Shown in pieces: positions 2,850 through 54,450 of a stretch of 64,000 bases of DNA (position 1 is the first letter of the stretch; every line of letters starts with the position of its first letter). The stretch is from Phallusia mammillata (taxonomy: Eukaryota): the NCBI GenBank assembly GCA_965637545.1, contig OZ281494.1, positions 3,968,001 to 4,032,000 of the forward strand. The letters are read 5' to 3'. Under the pieces are notes generated by a model. That model was not told the origin of the DNA. It made no database searches and saw only the letters and a program-made list of their open reading frames with translations. A program made the translations under genes and the position numbers.

Positions 2850-5235
2850 GGTGACTTGGATGATTCACTTTCGTTCAAGACAAAATGATGTAATTTTGTG
2901 CACTAGCGTCGTCAAGCGGCAGAAAAATTTGAAAACAAAAACAGGTCTGTTGCAGTTTGCATGTCATTGTAATTAGTGATGCACCAAACCGCCTGAATGG
3001 GCAGGAACTTGGCCGAATGGTTTGGCGTGCCTGATCCATATACAGACATAAAAAACCTGACCGAGATTCGTCTCTAGGAGTGTCCTGGGTTCGAACCCGT
3101 ACAAAAATGGTGATCCGCCAAGAACCCGATTGAAAAGCATATTCTAAAACCTCTTTCTGATTCAGGTTTTTAACCATCAATGCATAAGCTTTGCTAAGCT
3201 TCCAATATTTTGCAGAAAACGTGACTTGTATTTTTTAGACGCAGCAATCAGTTAATTTATGATATTTCATCTTCGAGATATTGAAAGTTTTGGGATTAAA
3301 TGTATGCAATTAAAAAGTTCGGTTTCGGCCGGTTTTCTAAAAAATTCGAGCCGAAACCGAAACATTGGAAAACGGCATATTCGGCCGAAATGTTTCGGCC
3401 AACCGAAATATGGGTGCATCATTAACTGTAATGTGTTGGAATAATGTGGACAGTTTGGCAGAAACTTGGGCCAATTAGTCCGAGGCGTTACACTCATATG
3501 ATTCGACCTCAGGAGCGTCCTGGTTTCGAAACCCGTGAGAAAAGTGGACTTTAAAATTTAGGCAAAAATAGGGCAAAATATAAACATAATAAGAATGTGT
3601 TTACAGTGCACTCATATATTAACAAAGGTATAATTAGATGAGCAAAAATTGAACAAAATGTAATAAATTTGAGGCACGTTAAAATAAGAGCGATGACTAC
3701 AATCCAAATCCTGATCTTAAATGGTGTTTGTAGTTTGGCGTCGTTTGTCGACTTTGGCCTCTCAGGGTAAAAATGAAAATGTTTGAAATTGTTAATTGAG
3801 GAATTGCTAAAAAAAGATAGGAATCTTCGTTTAGATTGGAGTTGTTTGAAAACAATCAGTTGCTTTTGGTAGCACACATTTTAAAGTTTTTCGAATTGTT
3901 GACGGGCCTGTTAGAATGCTACACCATATACTAAATAGAAAATAACTTTCTCCAAAGCACGCTAGCCCTGTGGTATAAACTAAAATTGCCACAAAAGCCA
4001 TGGCAGAACATAAGATTAAATGACACGAAAGTTGTTTTGATTCCACCGATCCATTACAGAACAGACTTTCATCCATAGAGGAGGTACGTCAACGTAAAAC
4101 CGCATCTTAAAAGGTGTTTGTCTAGTTTGGCTATAGTTAATTAGGGTGGAAACGTGAATATTTTAAGGTGCCATTGAGGAATTGCTAAAATGATTGGAAA
4201 GCGCCGTTTTGATTGGATTTGTTCAAAAACATTTAGTTGCACACATTAAAAATGTCACTAGTTTTATACACACTCACACTTGTTTATTATCACGCTCTAA
4301 TGTCATGGTATCAGTGCAGTACAACGGGTCAAAAAGGCATGTGATATTCTGACAACATAACGCAACAACACAACATCGGTGGAGGAGCTATGGTTGAATG
4401 TGTCCTGTGTTTTCCTGATAATTTCCCGGGATCTTAATGTTAACTGGAGTCCAGAGAAGCCGAAATGGTAGGAAGTACACATGTTTTAGTTATGACATGA
4501 GAATACGTCAGTGTGTAAATAAGACAAAAACTCATTTAATTACAAAGTAAGATTACAAACATTGCAGTGAAATCAAATGCCAGACACACAGGAAGCATTA
4601 CAATACAAAAACAAGAATGCTTGCAAATGTCTACAGTGGAAAAACACTGGTGGCATCAAATGTTTGCTGGCAAAAACTAAATTCGTGTCTTTCCCACCAA
4701 GCAAAACCCAAATGTTTGTGGTTATAAGTAAAAAATAATCTTATATTAGCTAAACAATGTGTTCAATTTAAGGAATGTGGTTTCGTTGCCCGATGATTAC
4801 AAACTCATGTTTATGAACCATTTAAAATCTGCTTGTAACCAACCAATGCAAAATATAACGGAATTTACAGATGCAATGCTATGACACAAATAGTAACGAA
4901 ACGTCAAAGTCAAATCTGAAAACGAAACACACGATCTTTGCTTGATGATTATTCACTAAGTTGGGGTAACCCCTTAGAAGGCACTCAGCACTTGGGTGAG
5001 GGGCAAAGCAAGCATAAAAAAGTTCAACGTATAGTTTTTTCCAACGTTAACATTTATACAATACGATACAGTATCGAATAGCAAAATCCGACTTGGTGGT
5101 TTAGAGCTTCAACCAAATTTTATATTGTCTGAGACAACCAATGACAACCAATGACGCTTGCTCTTTCATAACATTGCACAACTGCAAACTAATTTTTTGA
5201 ACTTTCACCTCTTTTGCATATGCCTTATTTCTCTG

Positions 5236-8200
5236 CTACTGAGACCTGAAATCAGCTTCACGTTTGCACGTCGGCATTTTCTGTCTGATGTCGCCATCCA
5301 TGACGCAGTACAGCAGGAAGACGACGATTCCCTGCGATCCGTTCAGCAAGCTGTGGATCTACATAAACACCTCGTTCGAAATCTCGTTTACGATACCTGC
5401 AAAAACGATTTGTTGATAAAGCATAACCTTGAAAGTCCTAACACTGATGCAAATGTAAATGAAACTTGAAAAATTCACATGCACAAATATTACCTGTAAA
5501 GAAAGCCAAACCCCAAGTTCCACCAAGCATAAAGAAGAGCAAGATGAAAGACTTTGCAGCTCTCAAAGCATCTTCTGTCCCGGGATCTTCTCCTCTGTTC
5601 CGCATCTTCCTCGAGTGCAGCATCACATGTGTGATCTTTAGTATGATCATGGAGTTGATAAGGAGGACGAAAGCAAGAGGAGCGACGACCGTGGAGTAGA
5701 AGATCGGAGTACCGGGAGTCAACCAGCATCTGTCGTACTTTCGAACCTGAACAAATTTGTTGCATTGCTCGTACAATGATTGGGGCTTCATGTAGATGTC
5801 GAGGAGAAACCCCACAGCGAAGGATAGTCCCACTATCAATGCTGGAATGATCAACCGATAACCATGAAGATCTTAAAACGTTTTGACGCATTTTGGGTTC
5901 GAAACTTGACTGGAAACGAAGTTGCCATAAAGAGACGAATTCCTTCAACTAAAAACCACACTCCTGAAAACAAACAAATGCACCAGAACACATAATATAA
6001 GGCAATGCTTGTTACTTTATTTACCTGAAGACAGCAACAAATATTGATTGGCTGTTGTGTGAATCACACATGGAATCTCGTGCGTCACTGCAAGATCATG
6101 TGATATATTGACAGCGTGGAAAAGCAGAAGAGCCAATGACAAGCTGATTTGAACCGGAACCCGATCTCCGCTGTGTTTCGACTTGTAGAGGATTATTATG
6201 GTGGCGATCAGAAACACGACTGAAGTTTATTCTGTAGCGTAAGAGGTGATCTGAAACGAAATTTTGCATAAATGCAAGCAATTGTTTAAAAAATCACATT
6301 TAAATATTTACCTTGACCCCCTTTGGTATGGTGGTGAACTCGACAGCCAGTAAAACTGTAAACAAGGTAAGATGGTTGCACTTGCAGGTGACGTTGCCTG
6401 TTACGTCATCGGTGATTGTGACGCAACCACGATCCGAGTATTTTCTTTCCACTCTGTCGAAGAAGAGACAGATTGGTTCCAGTTTTTTTATCTTCAGGTT
6501 TTCGTGGGATATATTTCCCACTTTGATCAGCTTGCAGACCGTTTCTGGTGATGCTGGAGGTATGACGAAACTTGCCTCTCCAGGCAATTGATCGTTTATT
6601 TCATCGGTAGTTGATCGTTTGCGGCGTAAGCGCTTGAAGCTATCGGCATCCCAACCCACAATAGCAATGTAGGGTGTGTTGAACGTAGCTATGTACCGCG
6701 TTGTGGCCAATGAACCGGCTTCGATCTGTTGAGTCTGTGTAGTTTGTGTTGAGTTTATCTTGAAGACAAGCACCGCAATTATGATTTGTTTCACTCCATT
6801 TGTTTGCAGTGTAAAGTTGATGTGAGATGACCCAAGCTGAAGATTTGAGTTGTATGTTTCCTGGTTGATGTTGGTAACTACGATGTGCAGTTGAGCATCT
6901 CCGCTACTATAAGTGGTTCCGTTTGTTTGAAAATGATTTCGGGAAAAATTCTCAACTCGCATTTCGATGTTTTCTATTTCCCTCACACTTGCAGGATTTA
7001 AATTTGTCAACTCATCCAGGAATGAAGGATCTGGAACAAAACAATTCCATGGCAAGTTAGTGAAGCAGATATTTTAAGGTGTTTAGCGCTCTCCTGACAT
7101 TTTTAACCATGCAAATATTGCAAATGCAAACCGCAATGCCTTATTGCAATTAAAGTGAAAAAATACATCCCAGGCTGATCATAGTTTTAAACTGGTCAGT
7201 ATTTCAAACAAATAAACACAGAAAAGCAAAACTCCTGTGCTTTAGTTAATGATTTTATTAAATGTCCATAATATATGAGGTAAAGACGGAAACGGGTTCT
7301 TCACTACCTTGTTTGTTCCTAATTCCATTTAATGGGGTTTTGAAGTTAAGAACTAAATAATTTGATGTGAGTTGTAACGAATAAAGATCACTTCATGATT
7401 GTATACCGGTAATGGTCAGCTTAGATATAATTTATTTTCTAAAATATTGTTTTCCTCTACGTCTGGCAAACGTAGTGCGAGATTTAACAAGTTTGTGAAA
7501 CATGTCGTACACCGACTAATAACAACAAGAAATACCTTCTGGTATGGATGCATTTGCTATAATCTCAGATACAATATTTTTCAGGGTGTCACCAAAAGTG
7601 GCAAAATCGGCCAACAGTGTAACTGCGGTTTTAGCAACGGTTTGAAGTTCATAACACACAACGTCTGGTCCGATTCCAATGGCGTACACTGTAATGTTGT
7701 TGTTGCTCGTCAAATCGTAACTGTTGTAAGCAATGCAAGTGTTGTAGGTTTAATTGGTTAAGACTGGTGTTGATAGCAAAGTGTTGCAGTTACATAAAGT
7801 TTTCTTTCAGTCCTCTGTTTATGAAGACAATAAAAAAAGCTATTTTTTGGGAATTATTTTTAACGTATTTGTTTTTGTTGTGTAAAAAGAAAGGCAATGA
7901 CCGTGAGCATACACATGAATTCAATAAAATTGAAATAATTTTGATAAAGGTTGTCACTGGGGTGGATGTCGTAGCAACAATATGGTTACGAATAAAACGA
8001 AAAACAAAAAGACATTTAAAAACAAATATAAAATTGGTCATTACGCTAAATACTCACATGCTAGTCAACTCAACAGGGTTTGCTTTTCGGTATGTTGTAA
8101 GTATCAGAAATTTGTTGGAGGTTGCGGCGTTGGCTGAGCTTCTGAAATCTATCTATAAGAAGCTTTAAAGTTAAGAGCTTCTGCATTTTATATCCCGCTG

Positions 8201-9267
8201 AAACAACGCCTTACTTTGACAGCTCTCTCGATGGCGGTTCCGGTAAAAGCGTTTGTCCCAAAAGGCTAAACCATACTATTGTTTACAGCATCTTTGACAC
8301 AATGAACTGTAGTGCAATTTCCAAGAGTGGTTGGGTTGTGATAAAAGCTGTTCTCTTTGTAATCATGGCTGTCAAATAAGAATATAAAAAGTATTTATGT
8401 CAAAATCGGTGAACTTTTTCTCAAAGTAATTACAAAACCCTTTAGCACGTCGAAACTTATAACTACATGCTCTTAAAAATTGGTAAAGTAACTTTTAGGA
8501 AAAAACGCACATAACTTATTTATTTACTTGGAAATCTTGCCAACATCCAAAAATCCCGTCATGTTTTAATGCACTCCATAAAAACGAGACAAAAACGTTC
8601 ATGAGCAAATGAAGCGAACAAATATTAGGTATCTTATCTAAAACATCGCTCATGACATAAGCGTATTTTTCCAACTTAAAATGCCTGTTTTCTTCATGAA
8701 ACATTTAATAACACTTTCAAATAATTTGAAATGTAACAAACATCGAAATAGGAACTGGATAGTAAAATTAGTCATTTTTTATCTTTTATGCATGGACACT
8801 TAAAACAACGAACAAAAAATCTACAATCTTAATAAAATATAACTTAGTTTCTATCTTCGAAAACAATGCGTTAACAAAGGTAACAAAAATCTGGTAATCC
8901 TTGATAGTAATTCAATTAAACGCCTAATACGGCCGTAACCTCTATATATTTTCTTTCTTTAATTAAATTGTGCCACATAAATACGTTTTAGATTCGCAAA
9001 AGTCAACACACATCTTATATTAAGGATGTTGCAAACTGGGCCGAAGTTGGTTGGAAATTAGGACGGAAATGATAGTGAGAATTCAAATTCGAATTAAACC
9101 CGTTTTATTCAAATTTAAACTGGAAAGCCCGACCCGTTATAAAAATATAAACTGTCGCGTTAGTTCACATAAAGTATAGAAAAAACACCATGTTAGAGTT
9201 CACCTTGCAAACTTGGTTTGAAGCAGACGACGGCCAGCAGCACAAGTAGAGAAACAAAGAAGCTCAT
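5236..9267 (-). pseudogene. Locus A: VWA-GAIN-7TM adhesion GPCR pseudogene
   Basis: Exons 9267-9204 (SP), exon 2 deleted, 8368-8215 (TAG at 8266-8268), 8152-8058, 7720-7536, 7030-6312 (GAIN, CKCNHL|TLF), 6250-6025 (TAA at 6227-6229), 5963-5494 (470 nt vs 471 in paralogs; 1-nt deletion in the TM4 Trp codon), 5396-5236 (TAG at 5359-5361). Confidence 0.9.
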
Positions 9268-10053
9268 TTTCTTAACCTATTGCTTTCTGCAGAATACTTA
9301 CGATTTTGCAGCACAGAACTACCAGATTTTGTACAAAACCAAAATGTTTAAAACTGTGCTTAATATAGACGTAATTAAAATTTGTAAATAACACAAACAT
9401 ACAGAACACATAGTCATTCAGCTGTAAATTACTTAAATTCTACAAAATCACTTGAAACCAATGACAGCCTTCGTATTAGACTTACAATAGCAGATCGACA
9501 AAGCTCCTAAATCTTTTACACCTCGTTATCACCTTGCATCCCGTCTTACCATTTTCAACTAACCACAGCCACATGAGCCAGTATCTATATACAAGCACGG
9601 AAGCAACAAGATTGTATGAAAAACGCTGATTGTTATTATCAGTTCCCCACACTCGGCCAATCCACCTGCCGAATGCCGTTTGCAGCTCGTTATCCTTTGA
9701 TTGAAACTGTAAACAACACAGCAATTGCAATGATGATCCAGCATTTTGTACATAAATATGTTTTATTGCTGGCGGAATCGTCTATGTAAAACTCCTGGTA
9801 TTTAATTTAACAACGCGATTTTTTCATTTTGTGGGACTTTCTCAAATTAATCGCACATTGCTTTTGTACGTTTCGCAAAAAGGTTTTAAAATTGTACTGA
9901 CTCTAGACTCTAGAGTCTAGAGTAATAAAGTACATAGTCCAGAGCTTGATATTTCGATCGACGCTTAATGTTTTGTAAAGCGTTTAAAGTGTTCTTTGGT
10001 TTTATTGTGGTTCGAATCCGTATTTTTTTTACCTATTTATTTGTCTTTGACAG

Positions 10054-10128
10054 ATCCGACAACAGCGTTTACCAATAGCCAACCACTCTTGGAAGTTGCA
10101 TCACAGTTCAATGCATCAAAGATGTTGT
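10054..10128 (+). pseudogene. Isolated relic of VWA exon 3
   Basis: TTTGACAG acceptor followed by about 70 nt aligning to exon 3 of the VWA copies (ACCACTCTTGGAAGTTGCATCACAGTTCAATGCATCAAAGATG). Confidence 0.75.
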
Positions 10129-10225
10129 TATTTCGGTGGTTTCTCTTCCTGTTTAACTCTCCCTATTTCCCTTACGCGGGTGGTTAGCTTTTAGGTTTCA
10201 ACTCGACTGGTTCCACCAACGTTGC

Positions 10226-21000: not shown

Positions 21001-24000
21001 ATGAGCTTCTTTGTTTCTCTACTTGTGGTTCTGGCAGTCGTCTGCTTCAAACCAAGTTTGCAAGGTAAGCTTAAAAGTAATTTCACTTCTTTGTAAGATA
21101 GCATACACAACCACTTTATATTTTAATTACTACGTACATAATGCTTTGTTTCTGTTCTACAGTTTGAAGCCGAGCAGGGCTTTTTGGCCATAGAGATTGA
21201 ACAAAACGGGTTTGTTTTTGGGGGCCTGACTGATCCCACTCGGTATCATTTCTGTCCTAAATTTTTCACCTTCGGCCCAGTTCACAACTCTGTGTGGGTT
21301 TACTTTTCAATGTATGTTATGCCAACTTGGTGATTTTAAATGTGTCACAATTGAATGAAAAGAAGAGAAATTAGGATTCGCACTGGAGAGATATTAGGGT
21401 TTACAGTATATTTTTTACAATTACAATTTGGGATTTTCAACCGTTTTAAATCATTTGCTGTTGTTTTCGAAGTTAAAATTGTATCAGTCCAAAAAAGCTG
21501 CTGCAACATCAAACTCTGGATAAGTTTCTTCTTATAGTGGGCTTGTAAATATTATGTTGCTAGCGGAATACGTAAATTATAGTAAAAAATACAAACTTAA
21601 ATTAAGTAAATCATTTTTTTATCATACTTTTTGAAAATATCATACTTTTTATTTTCCAGCCCAAGAAATCGACATTGTGTTTGTGGTGGACAGTACTAGC
21701 CCAATAACAAATTCTCAGTTTGCAATATACAAGAATGCTTTTGTAGCAATGGCTGATGCCCTAAAAGCGGGTTTCGACAGACACTTACTGCAAGTTGCCA
21801 TTCTTCAGTATACAAACAACAATTACAATAGGTAAATGTATTTTGTGAACAAAAACGTTGTTCTATCAGCGAAAAGTTCTATGTTGTAGATTATTTGTTG
21901 AATTTCTGCATTTATTACCCGAAAATTGATGTTTTGGGGAAGATTTTAGTTGCAAGAAAACAGGCCAGTTAAAAAGAATTATGCCATAAACGCTGTTGTA
22001 GATGAAGTAACTATTCGTTGTTCGTTTCATTTGCTCATCAACTTTTAGTCCCGTTCGCAGTCGGTAATTTTTAAAATTCGTTGGCAAGAAGTTTCTATAC
22101 AAATTCAATTAAACTCAGCAACTACTATTGGTGCTTTTGACTTCTAAAGTTTCTTATGATTAGTTCATTACATCCTCATACTGACTTATCCATTTCTCAA
22201 ATGTATTGTATATATGTTGAACCAATAAAATCATGCTGAGACAGATATGTTATATCTTGCGAGGATAAATACAACGAATTGGTGTAACGCCAGTCGTATA
22301 AACACGCTTTAAATTTGTTTTTGACAGCCCTGACTACACCAACAACTGGTTTTATCACAACCCCACCACTCTCGGTGATTGCACCACAGTTCAATGTATC
22401 AAAGATGCTGTAAACAATAATATGTATCAATATCTATATTCCAGTGCTTTTACCGCAACTGCAATCAAGAGAGCTGTCAAAGTAAGGCGTTGTTTTAACA
22501 GGAATAAAAGCAAAAGCACTTAACTTGAAGCTCCTTATAGATTGACTTCAACAACTCAGCCAACGCTGCAACTTCCAAAAAATTTCTTATTCTTACAACA
22601 CACTGTTTGGCAACATACGGTTGGGCAGCAGACAATTCTCTTTTGCCTACCAGGTTAGCGTTTAGTGTAACGACCAATCTTATTTTTAGTTTTTAAATGT
22701 CTTTTTTTCGCTTTATTTGTATCCTTGCCGTTTCTATGGCACCCACACAGATGCGTTTCAACTTTGTTCTCGAAATTGCCCACATTATTGAAATTGCCCA
22801 CATAAGTGTAAGCTCAGTGTCATTGTAACAGCCATTTATCTTTTTGACAAGATGATGTTACAAACAGATTTTGGACTTCTTCATTTTTGACAGACTTTTT
22901 GACAAATATGTTAGTTTTTGTTTTGCAACTTCTTGCCAACAACAGTTAAAACCAGTTAAAGCTACGTCGCATCTATTGTTTGTTACAGTTACGCGTTGAC
23001 GAGCAGCAACAACATTACAGTATACGCCATTGGAATTGGACCATACGTTGATCAAAGTCAGCTTCAAATCATTGCCAACAACGGAACCAGCAACGACACA
23101 GTTACACTGTTGAACAATGTTACCACCCTTGGTGACACCCTGGTTAACATCGTATCAAAAATTATACCAAATGTATCTATACCAGAAGGTAACTTCTTGT
23201 TGTTATTAGTCGGTGTACGAAGTGTTTCTCAAATAAGTTGAATCTGGCGCCCGTTTGTCTTTACGTAATTGCTTATATATAAGCTAGCACATTGAATTGT
23301 TTCGTTCTTAACTTCAAGACCCCAGTAACCAGATTTTTAATGGTTTGGAAAGTTGTTGTTGTTGTAGACTGATCCAATTCACTGACCGATTCAAAAATAA
23401 TCCAAAAGCTTGTGACGTTTTGCGCTGTTTACAATCATGCGTCACGTTTTGCTTTTGCAATTTTTTTGGAGGGTTAAAAATGTCAAGGGAGCGCTAAAAT
23501 TCTTAAAATATCTGCTTCACCAACTTGTCATGGAATTGTTTTGTTACAGATCCTTTATTGCTGGATCAGTTAAAAAATTTAAATCCTGCAAGGGTGACGG
23601 AAATAGAAAACATCGAAAATCGAGTGGAGAATTTTTCCCGAAATCATTTTCAAACAAACGGAACCACATATAGCAGCGGAGATGCTCAACTGCGCATCGT
23701 AGTTACCAACATCAACCAGGAGACATACAACTCAAATCTTCAGCTGGGATCATCTCACATCAACTTTACATTGCAAACCAAGGGAGTTAAACGAATCGTG
23801 ATTGCGGTGATTGTCTTCAAGATAAACACAACACAAACTACACAGACTCAACCGGTCGAATCCGGTTCACTGGCCATAACGCAGTACATATCTACAATCA
23901 ATACAACCTACATTGCTATTGTGGGTTGGGATGCCGATAGCTTCAAGCGATTAACTACCGATGAAATAAACGATCAATTGCCGGGAAACGCAAGTTTCCA

Positions 24001-25397
24001 TTTGCCCCCAACATCACCAGAAACCATCTGCAAGCTGATCAAGGCGGGAAATATATCCCTTAAAAACCAGAAGATAAAAAAACTGGAACCAATCTGTCTC
24101 TTCTATGACAGAGTGGAAAGAAAATACTCGGATCGTGGTTGCGTCACAATAACTGGTGGCGTAACAGACAACGTCACTTGCAAGTGCAACCATCTCACCT
24201 TGTTCACTGTTTTACTGGCTGTCCAATCCACCACCATACCAAAAGGCATCAAGGTAAAGACTTAACGTAAACTTTAACAATTGGCTCACAAAATGAACAA
24301 CACTGTATTTCAGATCACATCTTACGCCACAGAATCAACTTCAGTCGTGTTTCTGATTGCCACAATAATAATCCTTCACAAGTCGAAACACAGCGGAGAT
24401 CGGGTTCCGGTTCAAATCAGCTTGTCACTGGCTCTTCTGCTCTTCCACGCTGTCAACATATCACATGATCTTGTCGTGATGCACCAGATTCCATGCGTGA
24501 TTCACACAGCAGCCAATCAATATCTTCTGCTGTCTTCAGGTAAATAAAGTAATAGGATAATTGAAATTTTAGGCATAGATTTATATTTCGCAATCTGACG
24601 CAATTTTTTGTTTTAGGTGTATGGTTCCTCATTGAAGGAATTCGTCTCTTTATGGCAACTTCGTTTCCAGTCGAATTCCAAACTCAGGATTCGTCAAAGC
24701 GTGTAAAGTTCTTTATGTCGATTGGTTGGACTATTCCAGCCTTGGTTGTGGGAACATCCATGGCAGTGGGGTTTCCCCTCGACATCTACATGAAGCCCCA
24801 ACCATTATACGAGCAATGTAACGAATTCACACAGGTTTCAAAGTACGACAGATGCTGGTTGGTTCCTGGTACTCCGATATTCTACTCCACGGTCGTCGCT
24901 CCTCTTGCTCTCGTCCTCTTAACCAACTTCATGATCATCCTGAAAACAACACATGTGATGTTGCACTCGAAGAAGATGCGGAACAGAGGAGAAGATCCAG
25001 AGACAGGAGATGCGTTGAGAGCAGCAAAGTCTTTCATCTTGCTCTTCTTTATGCTCGGTGGAACTTGGGTTTTGGCTTTCTTCACAGGTAATATTTGTGC
25101 GTCTTTTTAACGTTTTAGTTTTCGTAAGTTGTATTAATGCAAGGGATTTCAAAGATATGGTTTTACAAACTTATTACATTTGCAGGAATCGGGAACGAGA
25201 TTTCGAACGAGGTGTTCATGTACATCCACAGCTTGGTGAACGGATCGCAGGGAATCGTCGTCTTCCTGTTGTATTGCTTCATGGATGACGACATCAGACA
25301 GGAAATGCTGACGTGCAAACGTGAAGCTGATGTTGGATCGAAGCAGCAGAGAAACGTGGCAAATGCAGAAGGAGGTGAAAGTTCAAACCCGAAATAA
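21001..25397 (+). CDS. Locus C: adhesion GPCR SP-VWA-GAIN-7TM, 771 aa
   Basis: Exons 21001-21064, 21660-21831 (EIDIVFVVDSTS), 22328-22481, 22541-22653 (KFLILTT), 22989-23188 (ITVYAIGIG), 23550-24253 (GPS CKCNHL|TLFTVLL), 24314-24539, 24617-25087 (WFLIEGIR, DRCWL, LGGTW), 25186-25397 (NGSQG). The exons total 2316 nt in frame. Confidence 0.9.
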
Positions 25398-31300: not shown

Positions 31301-31346
31301 TGTTGGAAAATCGTAAGTATTCTACAGAAAGAAATAGGTTGAGAAA

Positions 31347-34300
31347 ATGAGCTTCTTTGTTTCTCTACTTGTGGTTCTGGCAGTCGTCTGCTTCAAACCA
31401 AGTTTGCAAGGTAAGCTTAAAAGTAATTTCACTTCTTTGTAAGATAGCATACACAACCACTTTATATTTTAATTACTACGTACATAATGCTTTGTTTCTG
31501 TTCTACAGTTTGAAGCCGAGCAGGGCTTTTTGGCCATAGAGATTGAACAAAACGGGTTTGTTTTTGGGGGCCTGACTGATCCCACTCGGTATCATTTCTG
31601 TCCTAAATTTTTCACCTTCGGCCCAGTTCACAACTCTGTGTGGGTTTACTTTTCAATGTATGTTATGCCAACTTGGTGATTTTAAATGTGTCACAATTGA
31701 ATGAAAAGAAGAGAAATTAGGATTCGCACTGGAGAGATATTAGGGTTTACAGTATATTTTTTACAATTACAATTTGGGATTTTCAACCGTTTTAAATCAT
31801 TTGCTGTTGTTTTCGAAGTTAAAATTGTATCAGTCCAAAAAAGCTGCTGCAACATCAAACTCTGGATAAGTTTCTTCTTATAGTGGGCTTGTAAATATTA
31901 TGTTGCTAGCGGAATACGTAAATTATAGTAAAAAATACAAACTTAAATTAAGTAAATCATTTTTTTATCATACTTTTTGAAAATATCATACTTTTTATTT
32001 TCCAGCCCAAGAAATCGACATTGTGTTTGTGGTGGACAGTACTAGCCCAATAACAAATTCTCAGTTTGCAATATACAAGAATGCTTTTGTAGCAATGGCT
32101 GATGCCCTAAAAGCGGGTTTCGACAGACACTTACTGCAAGTTGCCATTCTTCAGTATACAAACAAAAATTACAATAGGTAAATGTATTTTGTGAACAAAA
32201 ACGTTGTTCTATCAGCGAAAAGTTCTATGTTGTAGATTATTTGTTGAATTTCTGCATTTATTACCCGAAAATTGATGTTTTGGGGAAGATTTTAGTTGCA
32301 AGAAAACAGGCCAGTTAAAAAGAATTATGCCATAAACGCTGTTGTAGATGAAGTAACTATTCGTTGTTCGTTTCATTTGCTCATCAACTTTTAGTCCCGT
32401 TCGCAGTCGGTAATTTTTAAAATTCGTTGGCAAGAAGTTTCTATACAAATTCAATTAAACTCAGCAACTACTATTGGTGCTTTTGACTTCTAAAGTTTCT
32501 TATGATTAGTTCATTACATCCTCATACTGACTTATCCATTTCTCAAATGTAGCGTATATATGTTGAACCAATAAAATCATGCTGAGACAGATATGTTATA
32601 TCTTGCGAGGATAAATACAACGAATTGGTGTAACGCCAGTCGTATAAACACGCTTTAAATTTGTTTTTGACAGCCCTGACTACACCAACAACTGGTTTTA
32701 TCACAACCCCACCACTCTCGGTGATTGCACCACAGTTCAATGTATCAAAGATGCTGTAAACAATAATATGTATCAATTTCTATATTCCAGTGCTTTTACC
32801 GCAACTGCAATCAAGAGAGCTGTCAAAGTAAGGCGTTGTTTTAACAGGAATAAAAGCAAAAGCACTTAACTTGAAGCTCCTTATAGATTGACTTCAACAA
32901 CTCAGCCAACGCTGCAACTTCCAAAAAATTTCTTATTCTTACAACACACCGTTTGGCAACATATGGTTGGGCAGCAGACAATTCTCTTTTGCCTACCAGG
33001 TTAGCGTTTAGTGTAACGACCAATCTTATTTTTAGTTTTTAAATGTCTTTTTTTCGCTTTATTTGTATCCTTGCCGTTTCTATGGCACCCACACAGATGC
33101 GTTTCAACTTTGTTCTCGAAATTGCCCACATTATTGAAATTGCCCACATAAGTGTAAGCTCAGTGTCATTGTAACAGCCATTTATCTTTTTGACAAGATG
33201 ATGTTACAAACAGATTTTGGACTTCTTCATTTTTGACAGACTTTTTGACAAATATGTTAGTTTTTGTTTTGCAACTTCTTGCCAACAACAGTTAAAACCA
33301 GTTAAAGCTACGTCGCATCTATTGTTTGTTACAGTTACGCGTTGACGAGCAGCAACAACATTACAGTATACGCCATTGGAATTGGACCATACGTTGATCA
33401 AAGTCAGCTTCAAATCATTGCCAACAACGGAACCAGCAACGACACAGTTACACTGTTGAACAATGTTACCACCCTTGGTGACACCCTGGTTAACATCGTA
33501 TCAAAAATTATACCAAATGTATCTATACCAGAAGGTAACTTCTTGTTGTTATTAGTCGGTGTACGAAGTGTTTCTCAAATAAGTTGAATCTGGCGCCCGT
33601 TTGTCTTTACGTAATTGCTTATATATAAGCTAGCACATTGAATTGTTTAGTTCTTAACTTCAAGACCCCAGTAACCAGATTTGGAAACAATTAAGGTAGT
33701 GGGGAACCCGATTAAATTTATGTTTAAACAAAACGGACTTGTTTCAGACCGGCCGTCCACATTTGGATCCAAACTTCACCGTGATAAATTTAACATTTAA
33801 ACCCACTTTGGTCACTAACCACAAGTTAATAAACTCGACCAAAAATGGCCAGAGATTTTTAATGGTTTGGAAAGTTGTTGTTGTTGTAGACTGATCCAAT
33901 TCACTGACCGATTCAAAAATAATCCAAAAGCTTGTGACGTTTTGCGCTGTTTACAATCATGCGTCACGTTTTGCTTTTGCAATTTTTTTGGAGGGTTAAA
34001 AATGTCAAGGGAGCGCTAAAATTCTTAAAATATCTGCTTCACCAACTTGTCATGGAATTGTTTTGTTACAGATCCTTTATTGCTGGATCAGTTAAAAAAT
34101 TTAAATCCTGCAAGGGTGACGGAAATAGAAAACATCGAAAATCGAGTGGAGAATTTTTCCCGAAATCATTTTCAAACAAACGGAACCACATATAGCAGCG
34201 GAGATGCTCAACTGCGCATCGTAGTTACCAACATCAACCAGGAGACATACAACTCAAATCTTCAGCTGGGATCATCTCACATCAACTTTACATTGCAAAC

Positions 34301-36087
34301 CAAGGGAGTTAAACGAATCGTGATTGCGGTGATTGTCTTCAAGATAAACACAACACAAACTACACAGACTCAACCGGTCGAATCCGGTTCATTGGCCACA
34401 ACGCAGTACATATCTACAATCAATACAACCTACATTGCTATTGTGGGTTGGGATGCCGATAGCTTCAAGCGATTAACTACCGATGAAATAAACGATCAAT
34501 TGCCGGGAAACGCAAGTTTCCATTTGCCCCCAACATCACCAGAAACCATCTGCAAGCTGATCAAGGCGGGAAATATATCCCTTAAAAACCAGAAGATAAA
34601 AAAACTGGAACCAATCTGTCTCTTCTATGACAGAGTGGAAAGAAAATACTCGGATCGTGGTTGCGTCACAATAACTGGTGGCGTAACAGACAACGTCACT
34701 TGCAAGTGCAACCATCTCACCTTGTTCACTGTTTTACTGGCTGTCCAATCCACCACCATACCAAAAGGCATCAAGGTAAAGACTTAACGTAAACTTTAAC
34801 AATTGGCTCACAAAATGAACAACACTGTATTTCAGATCACATCTTACGCCACAGAATCAACTTCAGTCGTGTTTCTGATTGCCACAATAATAATCCTTCA
34901 CAAGTCGAAACACAGCGGAGATCGGGTTCCGGTTCAAATCAGCTTGTCATTGGCTCTTCTGCTTTTCCACGCTGTCAACATATCACATGATCTTGCCATC
35001 ATCCACAAAATTTCATGCGTGATTCACACAGCAGCCAATCAATATCTTCTGCTGTCTTCAGGTAAATAAAGTAATAGGATAATTGAAATTTTAGGCATAG
35101 ATTTATATTTCGCAATCTGACGCAATTTTTTGTTTCAGGAGTATGGTTCCTCATTGAAGGAATTCGTCTTTTTATGGCAACTTCGTTTCCAGTCGAATTC
35201 CAAACTCAGGATTCGTCAAAGCGTGTAAAGTTCTTTATGTCGATTGGTTGGATTGTTCCAGCCTTGGTAGTGGGAACATCCATGGCAGTGGGGTTTTCCC
35301 TCGACATCTACATGAAGCCCCAACCATTATACGAGCAATGTAACGAATTTATTCAGGTTTCCAAGTACGACAGATGCTGGTTGGCTCCCGGTACTCCGAT
35401 CTTCTACTCCACGGTCGTCGCTCCTCTTGCTGTCGTCCTCTTAACCAACTTCATGATCATCCTGAAGACAACACATGTGATGTTGCACTCGAAGAAGATG
35501 CGGAACAGAGGAGAAGATCCAGGGACAGGAGATGCGTTGAGAGCAGTAAAGTCTTTCATCTTACTCTTCTTCATGCTTGGCGGAACTTGGGTTTTGGCTT
35601 TCTTCACAGGTAATATTTGTGCGTCTTTTTAACGTTTTAGTTTTCGTAAGTTGTTTTACTGCAAGGGATTTCAAAGATGTGGTTTTACAAACTTATTTCA
35701 TTTTCAGGAATCGGGAACGAGATTTCGAACGAGGTGTTCATGTACATCCACAGCTTGGTGAACGGATCGCAGGGAATCGTCGTCTTCCTGCTGTACTGCG
35801 TCATGGATGACGACATCAGACAGGAAATGCTGACGTGCAAGCGTGAAGCTGATGTTGGGCCGAAGCAGCAGAGAAACGTGGCAAAACCAAACGGAGGTGA
35901 AAGTTCAAATGCGGAAGGAGATGAAAGTTTAAATGCTAAAGGGGGTGAAAGTTCAAATGCGGAAAGCGGTGAAAGTTCAAATGCGGAAGAAGGTGAAAGT
36001 TCAAATGCTGAAGGAGGGGAAAGTTCAAATGCAGAAGAAGGTGAAAGTTCAAATGTGGAAGGAGTTGAAAGCTCAAACCCGAAATAA
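31347..36087 (+). CDS. Locus D: adhesion GPCR SP-VWA-GAIN-7TM with extended repeat tail, 827 aa
   Basis: Exons 31347-31410, 32006-32177, 32674-32827, 32887-32999, 33335-33534, 34072-34775, 34836-35061, 35139-35609, 35708-36087. The 5' part is nearly identical to locus C. Confidence 0.9.
35896..36084 (+). repeat. 24-bp coding VNTR, (G/D/V)ES(S/L)N(A/V/P)(E/K)x, 8 units
   Basis: Tandem GGTGAAAGTTCAAATGCGGAAGGA-like units in the last exon of D; about 5 units in F (about 54334-54447). Confidence 0.9.
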
Positions 36088-49683: not shown

Positions 49684-52600
49684 ATGAGCTTCTTTGTTTC
49701 TCTACTTGTGGTGCTGGCCGTCGTCTGCTTCAAACCAAGTTTGCAAGGTAAACTTAGACGTATTTTTTCTTGTATACCTTATGTAAACCTAACATACAGA
49801 ACCAGTTTACTTGCGGTGAGTGCAGAGTTGCAAATCGAGTCGTTGTTTTGCGTTTCATTTTGAATAAAACAGATTTGATTCTATCAATTCTTTCGGGTCT
49901 GACTTTTCATTATCATTTTTGTCGTACCTTTTTTTAAAATTTCAACCAAGTTTACAACATGTGAATTTACCTTATCAGCAGTGTGCCAAATTTGGTGATG
50001 TGTCTTATTGGAATTAATTAATAGAAGAAAAGTTTGTGCCTGGGAATTAGGCGTTTGCCAACCCTCTATAGAGGTGACGGCCGTATTAAGCGTTTAATTG
50101 AATTGCATTTAAAGATTAAGTAGTGTAAGAGATATTCAACCTTTGTTAACACATTGTTTTCGAAGATATAATTAAGTTATAGTAGTCCCAGAAAATTGGT
50201 GCAAAACCAAACATCTAATAGGTTTCTTGGTATAGCGGCTTTTTGATTGTTTGTTGTTAGTGAAGTGCGCTACTTATCTCCTAAATTATCTCCAGTTAGC
50301 TCCCTTTAACCTACTATTATTTTATTTTTTAGCTAAAGAAATCGACATTGTGTTTTTGGTGGACAGTACTATAGTACTGGTATACCACAATAACAACTTC
50401 TCAGTTTGCAACATACAAGAATGCTTTTGTAACAATGGCTGATGCCCTTGCACTGGGTTTTGCCAAAAACTTTTTGCAAGTCGCTATTCTTCAGTACGGA
50501 ACCAACAATTCAAGAAGGTAAATGTATTTTGTGAACCAAAAGCGTTGTTCGACCATCGAAAAGTCCTAAGTAGAACGTGGCGATTGAAACAATAGAAAAT
50601 GTTTAAAGGGGGCAATTTTAAGAGCTTTTATTTGAAGATTGTAGATTTTTGTACGTTGTTGTCCACGTATAAAAGATGAAAAATGACTAGTTTCACTATC
50701 CAGGAATTCCATTTTCGATGCTTGTTATATTCCAAATTATTTAAAAGCATTTTTACATGTTTAATGAAGAAAACAGGCATTTTAAGTCGGAAAAAAACGC
50801 TTATGCTCTAACGATGTTGTACATAAGGTACCTAATATTTGTTCGCTTCATTTGCTCATGAACGTTTTAGTCTCGATTTTATGTATTGCATTAAAACATG
50901 CCGGTAATTTTGGATGTTGACAAGATTTCCAAGTAAATAAATAAGTTGGTGGCTGTTAAAGCTGATAATAGTTACTTTCTAAAAGTTACTTTCTTTATTC
51001 TCAAACGCATGTAGTTATAACCAATAAGTTTCGAAGTGCCAAACGGTTTTGTAATAACATGGAAAAAATACACAGACTCAATGTAATGTTTTTGACATGA
51101 AACACTCTTTATATTTGTTTTTGACAGGCTTGAATACACCGACAACAAGTCTTATCACAACCCTACCACTCTTGGTGATTGCACTACAGTCCATTGTATT
51201 AAAGATGCTGTAAACAATGGTATGGTTCAGCCTTTTGGGACAAACGCTTTTACCGCAACCGCTATCGAGAGAGCTGTCTAAGTAAGGCGTTGTTTCAACA
51301 GGAATAAACGGCAAAAGCTCTTAACTTTAAAACTCTGTATAGATCGACTTCAACAACTCAGTTAACGCCGCAACTTCCAACAAATTTCTGATACTTACAA
51401 CATACCGGAGAGCAGACCCTTTTCAGTTGCATGGCAGGCGAGCATTTAGTGTGATGTTTAATTTTTATTTGTTCTTAAAAGTATTTATTTTGTTCTAGCA
51501 GAGGACTGAAAGAAAACTTTATTTGACTCCAACTCTTCCGTATCGAAAACAGTCGTAATCAATTAAACCTACAACACTTGTATTGCGTACAACAGTTACA
51601 TTTTGACATGCAGAAACAACATTACAGTGTACCCTATTGGAATTGGACAAGACGTTGTTGAAAGTGACCTTCAAGTCATTGCTAACAACGGAGTTAACAA
51701 CGACAGAGTTACACTGTTAGCCAATTTTACCACCCTTGGTGACACCCTGGTTAATATTGTATCGAAAATTATAGCAAATGCATCTACACCAGAAGGTAAC
51801 TTGTTGTTGTGATTAGTCGGTGTACGACATGTTTCTCAAATATGTTGAATCTTACGTCACTTTTTCATTAGCGCAACCACCAGACGCATAAGAAAATAAT
51901 ATTTTATAAACTAAATTATATCGGCTATGAAGTAATATTTGTTTGTCACAATCCACGTCGCTATATATAGTTCTTAACTTCAAGACCCCAGTAACCGGAT
52001 TTGGAAGCAGGCTAGGTGGTGGGGAACCAATTTAAATTTATGTTTAAACAAAACGGACTTGATACGCGCTTGTCCTTCACATTTGGGTCGTAACTTCACC
52101 GTGATTAATCCAACATTTAAACTCCCTTTGAACTTCGGTCTTTTGCCACAGGTTTTTGAGTAAATAAACTCAACCCAAAATGACCAGAGATTTTTAATGG
52201 GTTGAAATGTTCTTTCTGATATCTAATAATCTTATTATAAATTTATTATTACAAACATTGAATAAAATCATTAAGCAGAGCTCGTGAGTTTTGTTGTTCT
52301 GTGTTTATTCTTTCAGAAATACTGACCAGTTTAAAACAATAGCACAACCTTTTTTTCACTGTTTGCAGTTACGCATTGCGTTTTGCATTTGTAATTTGGC
52401 ATGGTTAAAACTATCGCTAAACTACTTACGATATTTGGTTCACCAACCTGTTATGGAATTGGTTTGTTACAGGTTCTTCATTTCTGGATCAGTTAAAAAA
52501 TGTAAATCTTGCAAGTGTGATAGAAATAGAAAACATCGAAAATCGAATTGAAAATTTTTCCCGAAATCATTTACAAACAAACGGAAGCACTTATAGCAGC

Positions 52601-54450
52601 GGAGATGCTCAACTGCACATCGTAGTTACCAACATCAACCAGGAGACATACAACACAAATCTTCAGTTGGGTTCATCTCATATCGACTTTATACTGCAAA
52701 CAAATGGAGTGAAACGAATCGTGATTGCGGTGCTTGTCTTCAAGATAAACGCAACACAAACTGCACAGACTCAACCTATAGAATCCGGTTCATTGGCTAC
52801 AACGCGGTACATAGCTACGTTCAACACAACCTACATTGCTATTGTGGGTTGGGATGCCGAAAGCTTTAAGCGCTTGCGCCGCAAAAGATCAACTACCGAA
52901 GAAATGAACGGTCAACTGACAGGAAAAGCAAGCCTCCAATTACCACCCCAATCACAAGCAACCGTCTGCAATCTGATCAAAGCGGGAAATATATCCCAAG
53001 AAAACCAGAAGATTAAAAAATTGGAACCAATCTGTCTCTTCTTCGACAAAGTGGAAAGAAAATACTCGGATCGTGGTTGCGTAACAATCACAGATAACGT
53101 AACAGGTAACATCACTTGCAAGTGCAACCATCTCACCCTTTTCACTGTTCTACTGGCTGTAGAATCCACCACCATACCAAAGGGCGTCAAGGTAAAGATT
53201 TGAATGTGAACTTTAACAAATGGCTAACAAAATAAACAACACGTTGTTGCAGATCACATCTTACGCCACAGAATCAACTTCAGTCGTGTTTCTGATTGCC
53301 GCCATAATAATCCTCTACAAGTCGAAACACAGCGGAGATCGGGTTCCGGTTCAAATCAGCTTGTCAATGGCTCTTCTGCTCTTTCACGCTGTCAACATAT
53401 CACATGATCTTGTCGTGATGCATGAGATTCCATGCGTGATTCACACAGCAGCAAACCAATATCTTTTGCTGTCTTCAGGTATACAGTACAAAATAACAGG
53501 GCAATTGAAATTTTAAGCATTGGTTTATATTCTGTGATTTGGCGCGAATGTTTTGTTTCAGGAGTATGGTTCCTACTTGAAGGAATTCGTCTCTTCATGG
53601 CAACTTCGTTTCCAGTCAAATTCCGAACCCAAAATCCGTCAAACCGTTTAAAAATCTTCATGGTCATTGGTTGGATTGTTCCAGTTATTGTAGTGGGATT
53701 ATCCTTTTCTGTGGGATTTCCTCTCGACATCTACATGAAGCCCCAACCATTGTACGAGCAATGTAACGAATTTATTAAGGTTCCAAAGTACGACAGATGC
53801 TGGTTGGCTCCGGGTACTCCGATCTTCTACTCCACGGTCGTCGCTCCTCTTGCTCTCGTCCTCTTAACCAACTTCATGATCATCCTGAAGACAACACATG
53901 TGATGCTGCACTCGAGGAAGATGCGGAACAGAGGAGAAGATCCAGGGACAGGAGATGCGTTGAGAGCAGCGAAGTCTTTTATCTTACTCTTCTTTATGCT
54001 TGGTGGAACTTGGGTTTTGGCGTTTTTCACAGGTACTATTTGTGCGTTTGTTACTTTTATATTTTTGAACGTTTTTATTTTCATAAGTTGCATCAATGCA
54101 AGGGATTTCGAAGGCTACTGTTTCACAAACTCATTACATTTGCAGGAATCGGGAACGAGATTTCGAACGAGGTGTTTATGTACATTCACAGCTTGGTGAA
54201 CGGATTGCAGGGATTCGTCGTCTTCCTGCTGTACTGCGTCATGGATGACGACACCAGACAGGAAATGCTGACGTGTAAGCGTGAAGCTGATGTTGGATCG
54301 AAGCAGCAGAAAAACGATGCTAAACCAAACAAAGGTGAAAGTTCAAATGCAGAAGGGGGTGAAAGTTCAAACGCTGAAGAAGGTGAAAGTTTAAACGCAC
54401 AAGGAGGTGAAATTTCAAATGCAAAAGGAGATGAAAGTTTCAACAATTAG
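49684..54450 (+). pseudogene. Locus F: VWA-GAIN-7TM adhesion GPCR with a disrupted VWA module but open GAIN-7TM exons
   Basis: Exon 1 49684-49747; exon 2 50333-50517 is 185 nt vs 172 (13-nt frameshifting insertion at about 50371); exon 3 51128-51281 ends in TAA (AAA in paralogs); exon 4 donor is GC (51438). The GAIN exon from 52473 and the 7TM exons are open to the stop at 54450. Confidence 0.85.

What the first reader, a model, noticed from the sequence alone, without database searches (positions are those of the whole stretch)
21660..22653. VWA domains have a degenerate MIDAS and hypervariable loops on that face
Seen, loop 1: DSTSPITNSQFAIYKNAF (C/D) vs DSYLFPYARYQNAF (G). Loop 2: NNMYQYLYSSAFT (C), NNMYQFLYSSAFT (D), NSVSWDYWKISFI (G), NGMVQPFGTNAFT (F). 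Loop 3: LTTHCLATYGWAADNS (C), LTTHRLATYGW (D), LTTYRWAADHS (G), LTTYRRADPF (F), LTTYRKANPV (A). Adjacent strands and helices stay conserved. Between near-identical C and D, I found 3 replacement changes and 1 silent change in the VWA exons (not an exhaustive count). Known: the DxSxS, T and D MIDAS residues lie in these three loops, the ligand-binding face of integrin I domains; DxSxS and the TDG Asp are lost here. Inference: a metal-independent, aromatic-rich, antibody-like variable binding surface under diversifying selection.
Basis: partly seen in the sequence, partly recalled or inferred. Interest (0 to 1): 0.75.

Follow-up and report, generated by a model that had tools for sequence, protein, structure and literature searches.

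The report
Sea-squirt adhesion GPCRs with metal-less VWA
A tandem cluster of sea-squirt adhesion-type G-protein-coupled receptor genes carries an integrin-like VWA domain that has lost its metal-binding site and varies mostly in the loops around that site, but the data show loosened constraint there and do not prove antibody-like diversifying selection.

Summary
The quoted peptides are all present. Positions 21660-22653 are exons 1-3 of a four-exon VWA module in a 9-exon, 771-aa adhesion GPCR gene (copy C: signal peptide, VWA, GAIN/GPS with HL/T, 7tm_2).

The closest relatives of the VWA are ascidian integrin alpha-I domains, which keep an intact MIDAS.

Only C, D and G have intact VWA modules.
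- C and D are 99.7% identical and may be alleles.
- F has a frameshift in loop 1 and a stop at the end of exon 2.
- A is a pseudogene throughout.
- B carries a SUEL lectin instead of the VWA.

Replacements and all indels concentrate in the MIDAS-face loops and the helix turns after them, which are rich in aromatic residues (19-26% against 8%). The fold core is under purifying selection (omega 0.23-0.37).

With loops defined beforehand from a predicted integrin I-domain structure, loop omega is about 1 (0.75-1.2; higher for G-F on few sites). Bottom loops behave similarly. Omega near 2 appears only with a loop definition widened after seeing the data.

So the degenerate MIDAS and the localised variability are confirmed, while diversifying selection remains unproven. 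A VWA on an adhesion GPCR was not found in the papers I searched. An earlier scan note reports a related receptor with an intact MIDAS elsewhere in this genome.

The parts
21001..21064 (+). Copy C signal-peptide exon (MSFFVSLLVVLAVVCFKPSLQ), donor in phase 1
   Evidence: It is conserved in C, D, G, F and A.
21660..21831 (+). Copy C VWA exon 1: strand bA, MIDAS loop 1 (DSTSP, loop 21692-21709), helix a1, strand bB
   Evidence: Pfam VWA match, E 1.7e-5, 25.6 bits against a 23.8 cut-off. AG/GT splice sites. Aligns to the integrin aX and vWF A1 DxSxS region.
22328..22481 (+). Copy C VWA exon 2: ascidian-type Cys-loop insert (LGDCTTVQC) and MIDAS loop 2 (22425-22451; the MIDAS Thr position is Ala)
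   Evidence: A phmmer search of 1.84 billion proteins found as homologous hits only one ascidian fragment and the Clavelina integrin alpha I domain; the other three sub-threshold hits were unrelated repeat proteins or a fragment. Alignments.
22541..22653 (+). Copy C VWA exon 3: strand bD (FLILTT) and MIDAS loop 3 (22601-22633), with a 15-nt tandem duplication (HCLAT resembles YGWAA)
   Evidence: The MIDAS Asp position is Tyr/His.
22989..23188 (+). Copy C VWA exon 4: bE (ITVYAIGIG), variable bE-a6 loop (23038-23049), a6, bF, a7. The donor is in phase 1, so the VWA module is phase 1-1.
   Evidence: Pfam VWA positions 129-169, E 0.018.. It begins at the point where the Ciona integrin isoform P0010 rejoins P0007.
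23550..24253 (+). Copy C GAIN/GPS exon with CKCNHL/TLF cleavage motif
   Evidence: Pfam GPS match, E 1e-9..
24314..25397 (+). Copy C 7TM exons (24314-24539, 24617-25087, 25186-25397 including the stop)
   Evidence: Pfam 7tm_2 match, E 1.2e-16. One open 771-aa frame across 9 GT-AG exons.
31347..36087 (+). Copy D, intact. VWA exons at 32006-32177, 32674-32827, 32887-32999 and 33335-33534. It is 99.7% identical to C over 20193-23336.
57252..61981 (+). Copy G, intact. VWA exons at 58157-58316 (12 nt shorter in loop 1), 58679-58832, 58889-58986 (lacks the 15-nt loop-3 duplication) and 59380-59579.
49684..54450 (+). Copy F. The VWA module is disabled: 50333-50517 has a 13-nt insertion in loop 1, 51128-51281 ends in TAA, 51343-51437 has a GC donor, and exon 4 is 51596-51795. 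The GAIN and 7TM exons are open.
5190..9267 (-). Copy A, a pseudogene. It has no VWA exon 1. Exon 2 (8368-8215) has a TAG in loop 2. Exon 4 (7720-7536) has a 15-nt deletion. The 7TM exons have stops and frameshifts.
10049..10129 (+). Copy B: decayed remnant of VWA exon 2 (it contains a stop), upstream of a SUEL-lectin ectodomain. The GAIN/7TM exons at 13111-14974 are open.

Best explanation
This is a tandem, birth-and-death cluster of ascidian-specific adhesion GPCR genes.

Architecture. Each intact gene (C, D, G) encodes, in order:
- a signal peptide;
- one VWA domain of the ascidian integrin alpha-I type, carried on a four-exon phase 1-1 module;
- a GAIN/GPS domain with an HL/T cleavage site;
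- a secretin-type 7TM.

State of the VWA. It has lost four of its five MIDAS residues, so it cannot hold the metal that integrin I domains use to bind ligand. The fold core is still under purifying selection, so the domain is in use. In the VWA fold both termini sit opposite the MIDAS. Because this domain follows the signal peptide directly and leads into the GAIN domain, the former MIDAS face would be the membrane-distal tip of the receptor. This geometry is inferred.

How the loops evolve. The loops of that face, freed from metal coordination, change at about the neutral rate. They gain and lose codons by slippage: a 15-nt tandem duplication in C/D, a 12-nt deletion in G and a 13-nt frameshifting insertion in F. 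They have become rich in Tyr, Trp and Phe.

Likely mechanism (inferred). A protein or matrix ligand binds this aromatic tip without metal, pulls on the N-terminal fragment, exposes the tethered agonist that begins at TLFTVLL, and activates the 7TM. Paralogs differ in specificity because their tips differ. Whether that difference was driven by positive selection is open.
For: - Gene model: 9 GT-AG exons and one 771-aa open frame. Pfam hits for VWA, GPS and 7tm_2.
- Origin: exon 2 searched against 1.84 billion proteins returned as homologous hits only an ascidian fragment and the Clavelina integrin alpha I domain; the other three hits were unrelated. All four exons align to the Clavelina and Ciona integrin I domains at 35-49% identity. 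They share the LGDCxxxxC insert, and exon 4 starts where a Ciona integrin isoform rejoins.
- MIDAS: the integrin residues D15, S17, S19, T101 and D133 are invariant in alignment A2. The Thr register was checked against integrin aX and aM structures. C has D, T, P, A, Y/H and G has D, Y, F, S, Y. PMC4237329 states that all five residues are conserved in alpha-I domains, including those of tunicates.
- Core constraint: omega in secondary-structure elements is 0.23-0.38 for C-G, and 0.34 for GAIN+7TM.
- Localisation (C vs G): 10 of 17 aligned MIDAS-loop codons differ, 9 further loop codons are indels, and 10 of 20 first-helix-turn codons differ, against 13 of 105 remaining core codons.
- Aromatic content: 19-26% in the loops against 8% elsewhere.
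- Loop omega is about 1.
- Birth and death: F and A are disabled, and B swapped in a lectin.
- Fold: the AF2 model of the Ciona integrin I domain (pTM 0.76) matches aM, aX and a2 I domains and vWF A1/A3.
Against: - There is no RNA evidence that these genes are expressed or spliced as modelled.
- The VWA of C and G itself was not folded. Loop assignment rests on homology to an integrin I-domain model of only moderate confidence (pLDDT 71, and low in residues 54-81).
- Some signals exceed neutrality. In loop 2, 19 of 30 nucleotides differ between C and G, against 31-38% at synonymous and intron sites (p 0.0003-0.004, but the patch was chosen post hoc).
- The widened loop set gives omega of about 2.
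- Unitigs from other individuals show 10 replacement and 2 silent variants in the VWA exons, against 6 and 8 in the GAIN/7TM exons. The VWA exons are also about 4 times more variable than their introns.
- No ligand is known.
Confidence: 0.6

Rival explanations
1. One reading: the MIDAS-face loops form a variable, antibody-like binding surface kept diverse by positive (diversifying) selection among paralogs and alleles, for example for immune or self/non-self recognition.
For: - The widened top-loop set gives pN 0.41 against pS 0.25, omega about 2.
- pN of the top loops without the insert, against pS of the whole domain, gives p=0.04.
- The loop-2 patch is more diverged than intron or synonymous sites.
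- G-F loop omega is 1.7-4.9.
- Loop synonymous divergence is not clearly raised (pS 0.25-0.36 in loops against 0.23 in the core, on 9-29 synonymous sites), which argues against simply older loop sequence.
- Variants in other individuals are 10 replacement to 2 silent in the VWA exons. All ten lie in top loops, the insert or first helix turns. The neighbouring intron 1 is identical over 465 nt in run X5.
- The loops are enriched in aromatic residues.
- The birth-and-death pattern is typical of recognition receptor families.
Against: - With a-priori loop boundaries, omega is 0.75-1.2 in C-G and C-F, and bottom loops give the same values.
- There is only one independent intact comparison (C/D against G).
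- There are three loop-2 types in seven gene copies.
- Loop 1 is conserved among C, F and the other-species contig L001.
- The unitig variants may come from paralogs that map only in exons.
- There is no expression or tissue information.
Confidence: 0.3
2. The VWA module is a relic on its way out across the whole cluster. After MIDAS loss it has no function, the receptors work through GAIN/7TM alone, and the loop variation is decay.
For: - Two of five VWA modules are disabled (F, A). B has replaced its module with a lectin and keeps only a dead exon-2 remnant.
- The module is phase 1-1, so skipping it keeps the reading frame.
- PMC2396169 reports that 21 of 30 Ciona adhesion GPCRs have only a GPS domain.
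- Loop omega is about 1.
Against: - In C, D and G all four exons are open with canonical splice sites.
- Core positions have omega 0.23-0.38, with dS 0.27-0.4. That is clear purifying selection on the fold.
- The Cys pair of the insert and the hydrophobic strands are invariant.
Confidence: 0.12
3. The pattern is a recombination mosaic. Gene conversion homogenises the frameworks and introns among paralogs. The loop 'types' are older patches, or patches imported from paralogs outside the window, not sites of faster substitution.
For: - Divergence is clearly mosaic. For C-G, dS is 0.4-0.5 in exons 1-2 but 0.14-0.2 from exon 3 onward, and introns 2-4 differ by only 4-11%.
- C and D are 99.7% identical in the VWA but have dS 0.06-0.12 in the 7TM exons.
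- F and A share one loop-2 type.
- Run X5 carries a G-like S-D change at the start of exon 2 on a C-like intron.
Against: - No donor for any loop sequence exists elsewhere in the window at up to 5 mismatches.
- Synonymous divergence inside the loops is not clearly higher than in the frameworks.
- This rival is compatible with either selection or drift. It explains how the variants are distributed, not why they are kept.
Confidence: 0.25

Closest known systems
Ascidian integrin alpha-subunit I (inserted) domains (Ciona intestinalis 'integrin alpha-1' P0007; Clavelina lepadiformis 'integrin alpha-2-like' P0005/P0006)
   Same: These are the closest sequence relatives found (35-49% identity per exon). 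They share the VWA fold and the ascidian-specific LGDCxxxxC insert before helix a3. Exon 4 starts where the Ciona integrin isoform P0010 rejoins P0007.
   Different: The integrin domains keep all five MIDAS residues (DSSNS..T..D), sit inside an FG-GAP beta-propeller, and end in the internal-ligand segment. Here four of the five MIDAS residues are replaced, there is no propeller, and the domain follows a signal peptide and leads into GAIN/7TM.
von Willebrand factor A1 and A3 domains (VWA domains without a working MIDAS that still bind GPIb-alpha or collagen)
   Same: They have the same fold (Foldseek hits to the integrin-domain model). Their DxSxS is degenerate, e.g. DGSSR in vWF A1 (alignment). 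Their ligand binding is metal-independent; that is established knowledge, not tested here.
   Different: They are not close in sequence (E about 0.2 for exon 1). They sit in a secreted multimer, not a GPCR. From memory, vWF A3 binds collagen on a side face and not on the MIDAS face, so metal-free binding need not use the top loops.
Lineage-specific 'unclassified' adhesion GPCRs of Ciona (Kamesh et al. 2008, PMC2396169)
   Same: An ascidian-specific, dense, tandemly duplicated adhesion GPCR expansion with GPS and 7tm_2 and no vertebrate orthologue. Many members have little beyond the GPS domain.
   Different: That paper reports no VWA domain (0 occurrences of the term). The species of this window was not established beyond 'sea squirt', and no annotated protein model of these genes was found.
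Latrophilin-type adhesion GPCRs with a SUEL/rhamnose-binding lectin domain
   Different: The GAIN/7TM part of B belongs to this ascidian cluster (85-90% nucleotide identity to C) and not to latrophilins. No olfactomedin or hormone-receptor domain was seen.

Membership tests
VWA / integrin alpha-I domain | Sequence match to the VWA family profile | tested here: met
   Exon 1 matches PF00092 at 25.6 bits (cut-off 23.8, E 1.7e-5). Exon 4 matches at E 0.018, below the cut-off. Exons 2 and 3 match only through the ascidian integrin alignment.
VWA / integrin alpha-I domain | Complete MIDAS (DxSxS ... T ... D) | tested here: not met
   C/D has D-x-T-x-P, Ala and Tyr/His. G has D-x-Y-x-F, Ser and Tyr.
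VWA / integrin alpha-I domain | Inserted in the FG-GAP beta-propeller of an integrin alpha chain, with a C-terminal internal ligand | tested here: not met
   The domain lies between the signal-peptide exon and the GAIN exon. There are no FG-GAP exons. Helix a7 ends at IPE with no E-G motif.
VWA / integrin alpha-I domain | Rossmann-like alpha/beta fold of the domain itself | not tested
   Only the homologous Ciona integrin I domain was folded and matched to solved I domains. The spliced VWA of this window has no reference and was not folded.
Adhesion GPCR (class B2) | GPS motif with the H-L/T autoproteolysis site directly before TM1 | tested here: met
   PF01825 match, E 1e-9. CKCNHLTLF is present in all copies.
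Adhesion GPCR (class B2) | Secretin-type 7TM (7tm_2) | tested here: met
   PF00002 match, E 1.2e-16, on exon 24617-25087.
Adhesion GPCR (class B2) | Complete GAIN fold and actual self-cleavage | not testable with these tools
   Only the GPS subdomain was recognised by sequence. Cleavage needs protein work.
Diversifying-selected variable recognition receptors | Non-synonymous rate above synonymous rate at the binding sites | tested here: inconclusive
   A-priori loops give omega 0.75-1.2 (C-G, C-F) and 1.7-4.9 (G-F, few sites). Post hoc widened loops give about 2.
Diversifying-selected variable recognition receptors | Many distinct variants among paralogs or alleles | tested here: inconclusive
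   The window has three loop-2 types. Unitigs of three other individuals add about 10 replacement variants, but alleles and paralogs cannot be separated. No further copies could be retrieved.

The most novel reading that the evidence does not exclude
An integrin-I-type VWA domain that has given up its metal site has been recruited as the variable, aromatic-tipped recognition head of a polymorphic adhesion-GPCR family in a sea squirt. On this reading the family is a previously undescribed kind of invertebrate-chordate recognition receptor (immune, allorecognition or settlement cue) that couples a diversifying binding surface directly to tethered-agonist GPCR signalling.
Probability: 0.2. Interest if true: 0.8.

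Novelty: new variant of a known kind. Interest (0 to 1): 0.45.

Why it matters
Adhesion GPCRs are mostly orphan receptors, and how their ectodomains acquire ligands is poorly understood. The 2026 consortium review says co-evolution of their binding domains with ligands has hardly been studied.

This cluster shows several steps side by side:
- one exon module taken from the integrin I-domain lineage;
- loss of its metal site;
- re-tipping with aromatic residues;
- alteration by slippage;
- in neighbouring copies, disabling of the module or its replacement by a lectin.

A VWA head was not found in the adhesion-GPCR papers I could search. If the loops prove to be under positive selection or highly polymorphic, the family would be a candidate recognition system in the closest invertebrate relatives of vertebrates. 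If not, it is still a clear example of how a MIDAS-less VWA evolves once metal coordination stops constraining it.

Tried and rejected
- Retrieving more paralogs failed.
  - phmmer of exon 2 against 1.84 billion representatives gave only one 122-aa ascidian fragment (P0001) and the Clavelina integrin (P0005) as true relatives. P0002-P0004 are unrelated repeat proteins or a fragment.
  - The word search with the integrin I-domain region found integrins and collagen VI, but no GPCR model.
  - The word search with exon 2 found nothing, though it sees only proteins of 28-89 aa.
  - The only contig for P0001 is 1.9 kb.
- The RNA evidence was blank. No RNA run holds the locus, and the one 'RNA?' contig touches only 31 nt of a 7TM exon. 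Splicing is therefore inferred from frames, GT-AG sites and conservation.
- Read laying returned only short unitigs, so alleles and paralogs could not be separated. Depth in the 7TM exons is 30-45 times that in the VWA introns, which points to a large family sharing the 7TM.
- No loop donors were found inside the window.
- A compensated-frameshift origin for loop 2 was considered only by eye. No shifted similarity was seen.
- I considered and rejected the idea that the region is a repeat element or a non-coding conservation block, because the exons form one open frame with family-profile hits.
- The exon excess among the C-D differences is not significant (p=0.27).
Full report
WHAT IS THERE

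The window is eukaryotic (introns, GC about 37%). An earlier follow-up note on the same genome calls it a sea squirt.

Positions 21660-22653 are the first three of four exons of a VWA domain. Using frames, GT-AG sites and conservation among copies, I built a 9-exon model for copy C. It is one open 771-aa frame.
- Signal peptide: 21001-21064.
- VWA exons: 21660-21831, 22328-22481, 22541-22653, 22989-23188.
- GAIN/GPS exon: 23550-24253, with CKCNHL/TLF.
- 7TM exons: 24314-24539, 24617-25087, 25186-25397.

Pfam recognises VWA in exon 1 (above the curated cut-off) and in exon 4 (weakly). It also recognises GPS (E 1e-9) and 7tm_2 (E 1e-16). The VWA module starts and ends in phase 1. The gene is an adhesion GPCR whose ectodomain is a single VWA domain directly after the signal peptide.

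The exons were concatenated only inside scripts, to check the frame and count codons. No joined protein was printed or sent to a search or folding tool.

THE CLUSTER

Self-comparison and projection of the C model give seven copies.
- C, D and G are intact.
- C and D are 99.7% identical over 20193-23336.
- F has open GAIN/7TM exons, but its VWA module is disabled by a 13-nt insertion in loop 1 (a frameshift) and a TAA at the last codon of exon 2. Its exon-3 donor is also a non-canonical GC.
- A (minus strand) lacks exon 1, has a TAG inside loop 2 and a 15-nt deletion in exon 4, and has stops and frameshifts in the 7TM exons.
- B has a SUEL-type lectin in place of the VWA, plus a dead remnant of VWA exon 2 at 10049-10129.
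- E is a GAIN/7TM pseudogene.

ORIGIN OF THE DOMAIN

Exon 2 searched against 1.84 billion representative proteins gave five hits. The homologous ones are:
- a 122-aa fragment (P0001) from a 1.9-kb contig (L001) of another species;
- the I domain of a Clavelina integrin alpha chain (P0005).

A word search from P0005 added the Ciona intestinalis integrin alpha chains. All four exons align to these I domains at 35-49% identity. They share the LGDCxxxxC insert. Exon 4 starts exactly where a Ciona integrin isoform that skips part of the I domain resumes.

L001 holds a four-exon VWA closer to ours (42-63% identity per exon). It ends in phase 1 like ours and has a nearly intact MIDAS (DSTSS, NTF, TTDG).

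THE MIDAS

In the integrins the residues D15, S17, S19, T101 and D133 (P0007:186-400 numbering) are invariant. The Thr register was confirmed against the integrin aX and aM structures (GFT-YTATAI). [quoted passage not shown]
- In C/D they read D, T, P, A and Y (or H, depending on where the five-residue insertion is placed).
- In G they read D, Y, F, S and Y.
- F and A have Ala at the Thr position and Tyr at the Asp position.

WHERE THE VARIATION LIES

I could not fold the spliced VWA, because it has no reference. I folded the Ciona integrin I domain instead (pLDDT 71, pTM 0.76). Its best structural matches are integrin aM, aX and a2 I domains, collagen VI and vWF A1/A3. I used its secondary structure to define classes before counting.

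For C against G:

| Class | Codons that differ |
|---|---|
| MIDAS loops | 10 of 17 aligned, plus 9 indel codons |
| All top loops | 22 of 50 |
| First helix turn after top loops | 10 of 20 |
| Bottom loops | 6 of 19 |
| Remaining core | 13 of 105 |

Among C, G and F, 21 of 26 MIDAS-loop columns vary. The comparison values are 8 of 19 bottom-loop columns (p=0.012) and 27 of 112 core columns (p=1e-7).

All indels are in MIDAS loops:
- a 12-nt deletion in G loop 1;
- a 15-nt tandem duplication in C/D loop 3 (HCLAT copies YGWAA, 11 of 15 nt identical, and all four changes are replacements);
- a 13-nt slippage-like insertion in F loop 1.

The loops are rich in aromatic residues: 19% FWY in C and 26% in G, against 8% elsewhere and 8% in the integrin loops. 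The refuting condition 'variable residues map all over the fold' is therefore not met.

One caveat: loop 1 is strongly different only in G. C, F (apart from its insertion) and L001 share DST-x-x-IT-x-x-x-F.

IS IT SELECTION?

Nei-Gojobori counts for C-G give omega 0.53 for the VWA and 0.34 for GAIN+7TM. By a-priori class:

| Class (C-G) | omega |
|---|---|
| MIDAS loops | 1.16 |
| All top loops | 0.93 |
| Bottom loops | 1.16 |
| Core (all secondary structure) | 0.38 |
| Core without first helix turns | 0.23 |

C-F gives 0.75 for the loops. G-F gives 1.7-4.9, but on 1-6 synonymous changes. That is what loops released from constraint would show.

Signals above neutrality exist, but each is post hoc or confounded.
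- A loop set widened after seeing the data gives omega of about 2.
- pN of the top loops against domain-wide pS gives p=0.04.
- The loop-2 patch differs at 19 of 30 nucleotides, against 31-38% at synonymous and intron sites.
- Unitigs from three other individuals show 10 replacement and 2 silent variants in the VWA exons, against 6 and 8 in the GAIN/7TM exons (p=0.05). All ten lie in top loops, the insert or first helix turns.
- The VWA exons are about four times more variable than their introns (p=0.003).

The exon bias could come from paralog unitigs that reach 95% identity only in exons.

The same data show that run X1 carries only the C letters at the C/D-distinguishing sites and run X3 only the D letters. 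C and D may therefore be alleles, or a copy-number variant, and not fixed paralogs.

Divergence is also mosaic. For C-G, dS is 0.4-0.5 in exons 1-2 and 0.14-0.2 further on. C-D are nearly identical in the VWA but have dS about 0.1 in the 7TM. This indicates gene conversion. No loop donor lies in the window.

HOW IT PROBABLY WORKS

Shown:
- the architecture;
- the loss of MIDAS residues;
- purifying selection on the fold core of C and G;
- the localisation of change.

Inferred:
- VWA termini lie opposite the MIDAS, so the former MIDAS face is the membrane-distal tip.
- A ligand binds there without metal, as in vWF A1/A3.
- Force on the N-terminal fragment exposes the tethered agonist after HL/T and activates the 7TM.
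- Paralogs differ in specificity through their tips.

I put 0.6 on this reading with drift-like loop evolution, 0.3 on genuine diversifying selection, 0.12 on a functionless relic, and 0.25 on conversion mosaicism as a contributing process. These are not mutually exclusive.

COMPARISON AND NOVELTY

- Lineage-specific adhesion GPCR expansions in Ciona are known. PMC2396169 reports 24 unclassified receptors, with 21 of 30 carrying a GPS domain only and no VWA mentioned.
- MIDAS-less VWA domains are known.
- A VWA or integrin-I-type head on an adhesion GPCR does not appear in that paper, in the amphioxus repertoire paper, or in the 2026 consortium review.
- No annotated protein model of these genes was found.
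- Another first-stage note reports an adhesion GPCR with an intact-MIDAS VWA elsewhere in this genome (s1-388533, not checked).

I rate this a new variant of a known kind, of moderate interest.

LEFT OUT

The N run at 48193-48392 was not touched.

Noticed in passing
window 35889-36087 (D), 54330-54450 (F), 25340-25397 (C): The cytoplasmic tail ends in a variable number of GGESSNAE-like octapeptide repeats: about 8 in D, about 5 in F, one in C and B, and none in G, which stops earlier. The tandem repeat is also visible in the self-comparison at 35889-36100.
   Followed up: partly
window 49684-54450 (copy F): F's VWA exons are disabled but its signal-peptide, GAIN and 7TM exons are open. The VWA module is phase 1-1, so skipping all four exons would give an in-frame receptor with only GAIN and 7TM. 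This resembles the many GPS-only Ciona adhesion GPCRs.
   Followed up: no
window 10049-10129 and 12350-12901 (copy B): B keeps a dead remnant of VWA exon 2 upstream of exons encoding a SUEL/rhamnose-binding-lectin-like domain (CEGELLNITCPAGTVI...; ...FGEPCPGFSKYIDINMTC). The ectodomain was therefore swapped within this cluster. A and B lie head to head.
   Followed up: partly
window 20193-37300 (copies C and D): At the sites that distinguish C from D, run X1 shows only the C letters and run X3 only the D letters. C and D may be alleles or a copy-number variant, or even haplotypes placed in tandem by the assembler, and not two fixed genes.
   Followed up: partly
window 24394-25282: Unitig depth in the 7TM exons is 30-45 times that in the VWA introns in all three DNA runs. 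Many more genes in this genome share near-identical 7TM exons than carry this VWA.
   Followed up: no
L001 337-1496: A 1.9-kb contig from another species' sequencing run (DRR090687) carries a four-exon VWA with short introns. It is closer to this family than to integrins, ends in phase 1, and has a nearly intact MIDAS (DSTSS / NTF / TTDG). It is a possible picture of the state before MIDAS loss.
   Followed up: partly
window 624-1276 (minus strand): There is another copy of the conserved 5' block that holds the signal-peptide exon. It points to a further family member whose body lies beyond the window start.
   Followed up: no
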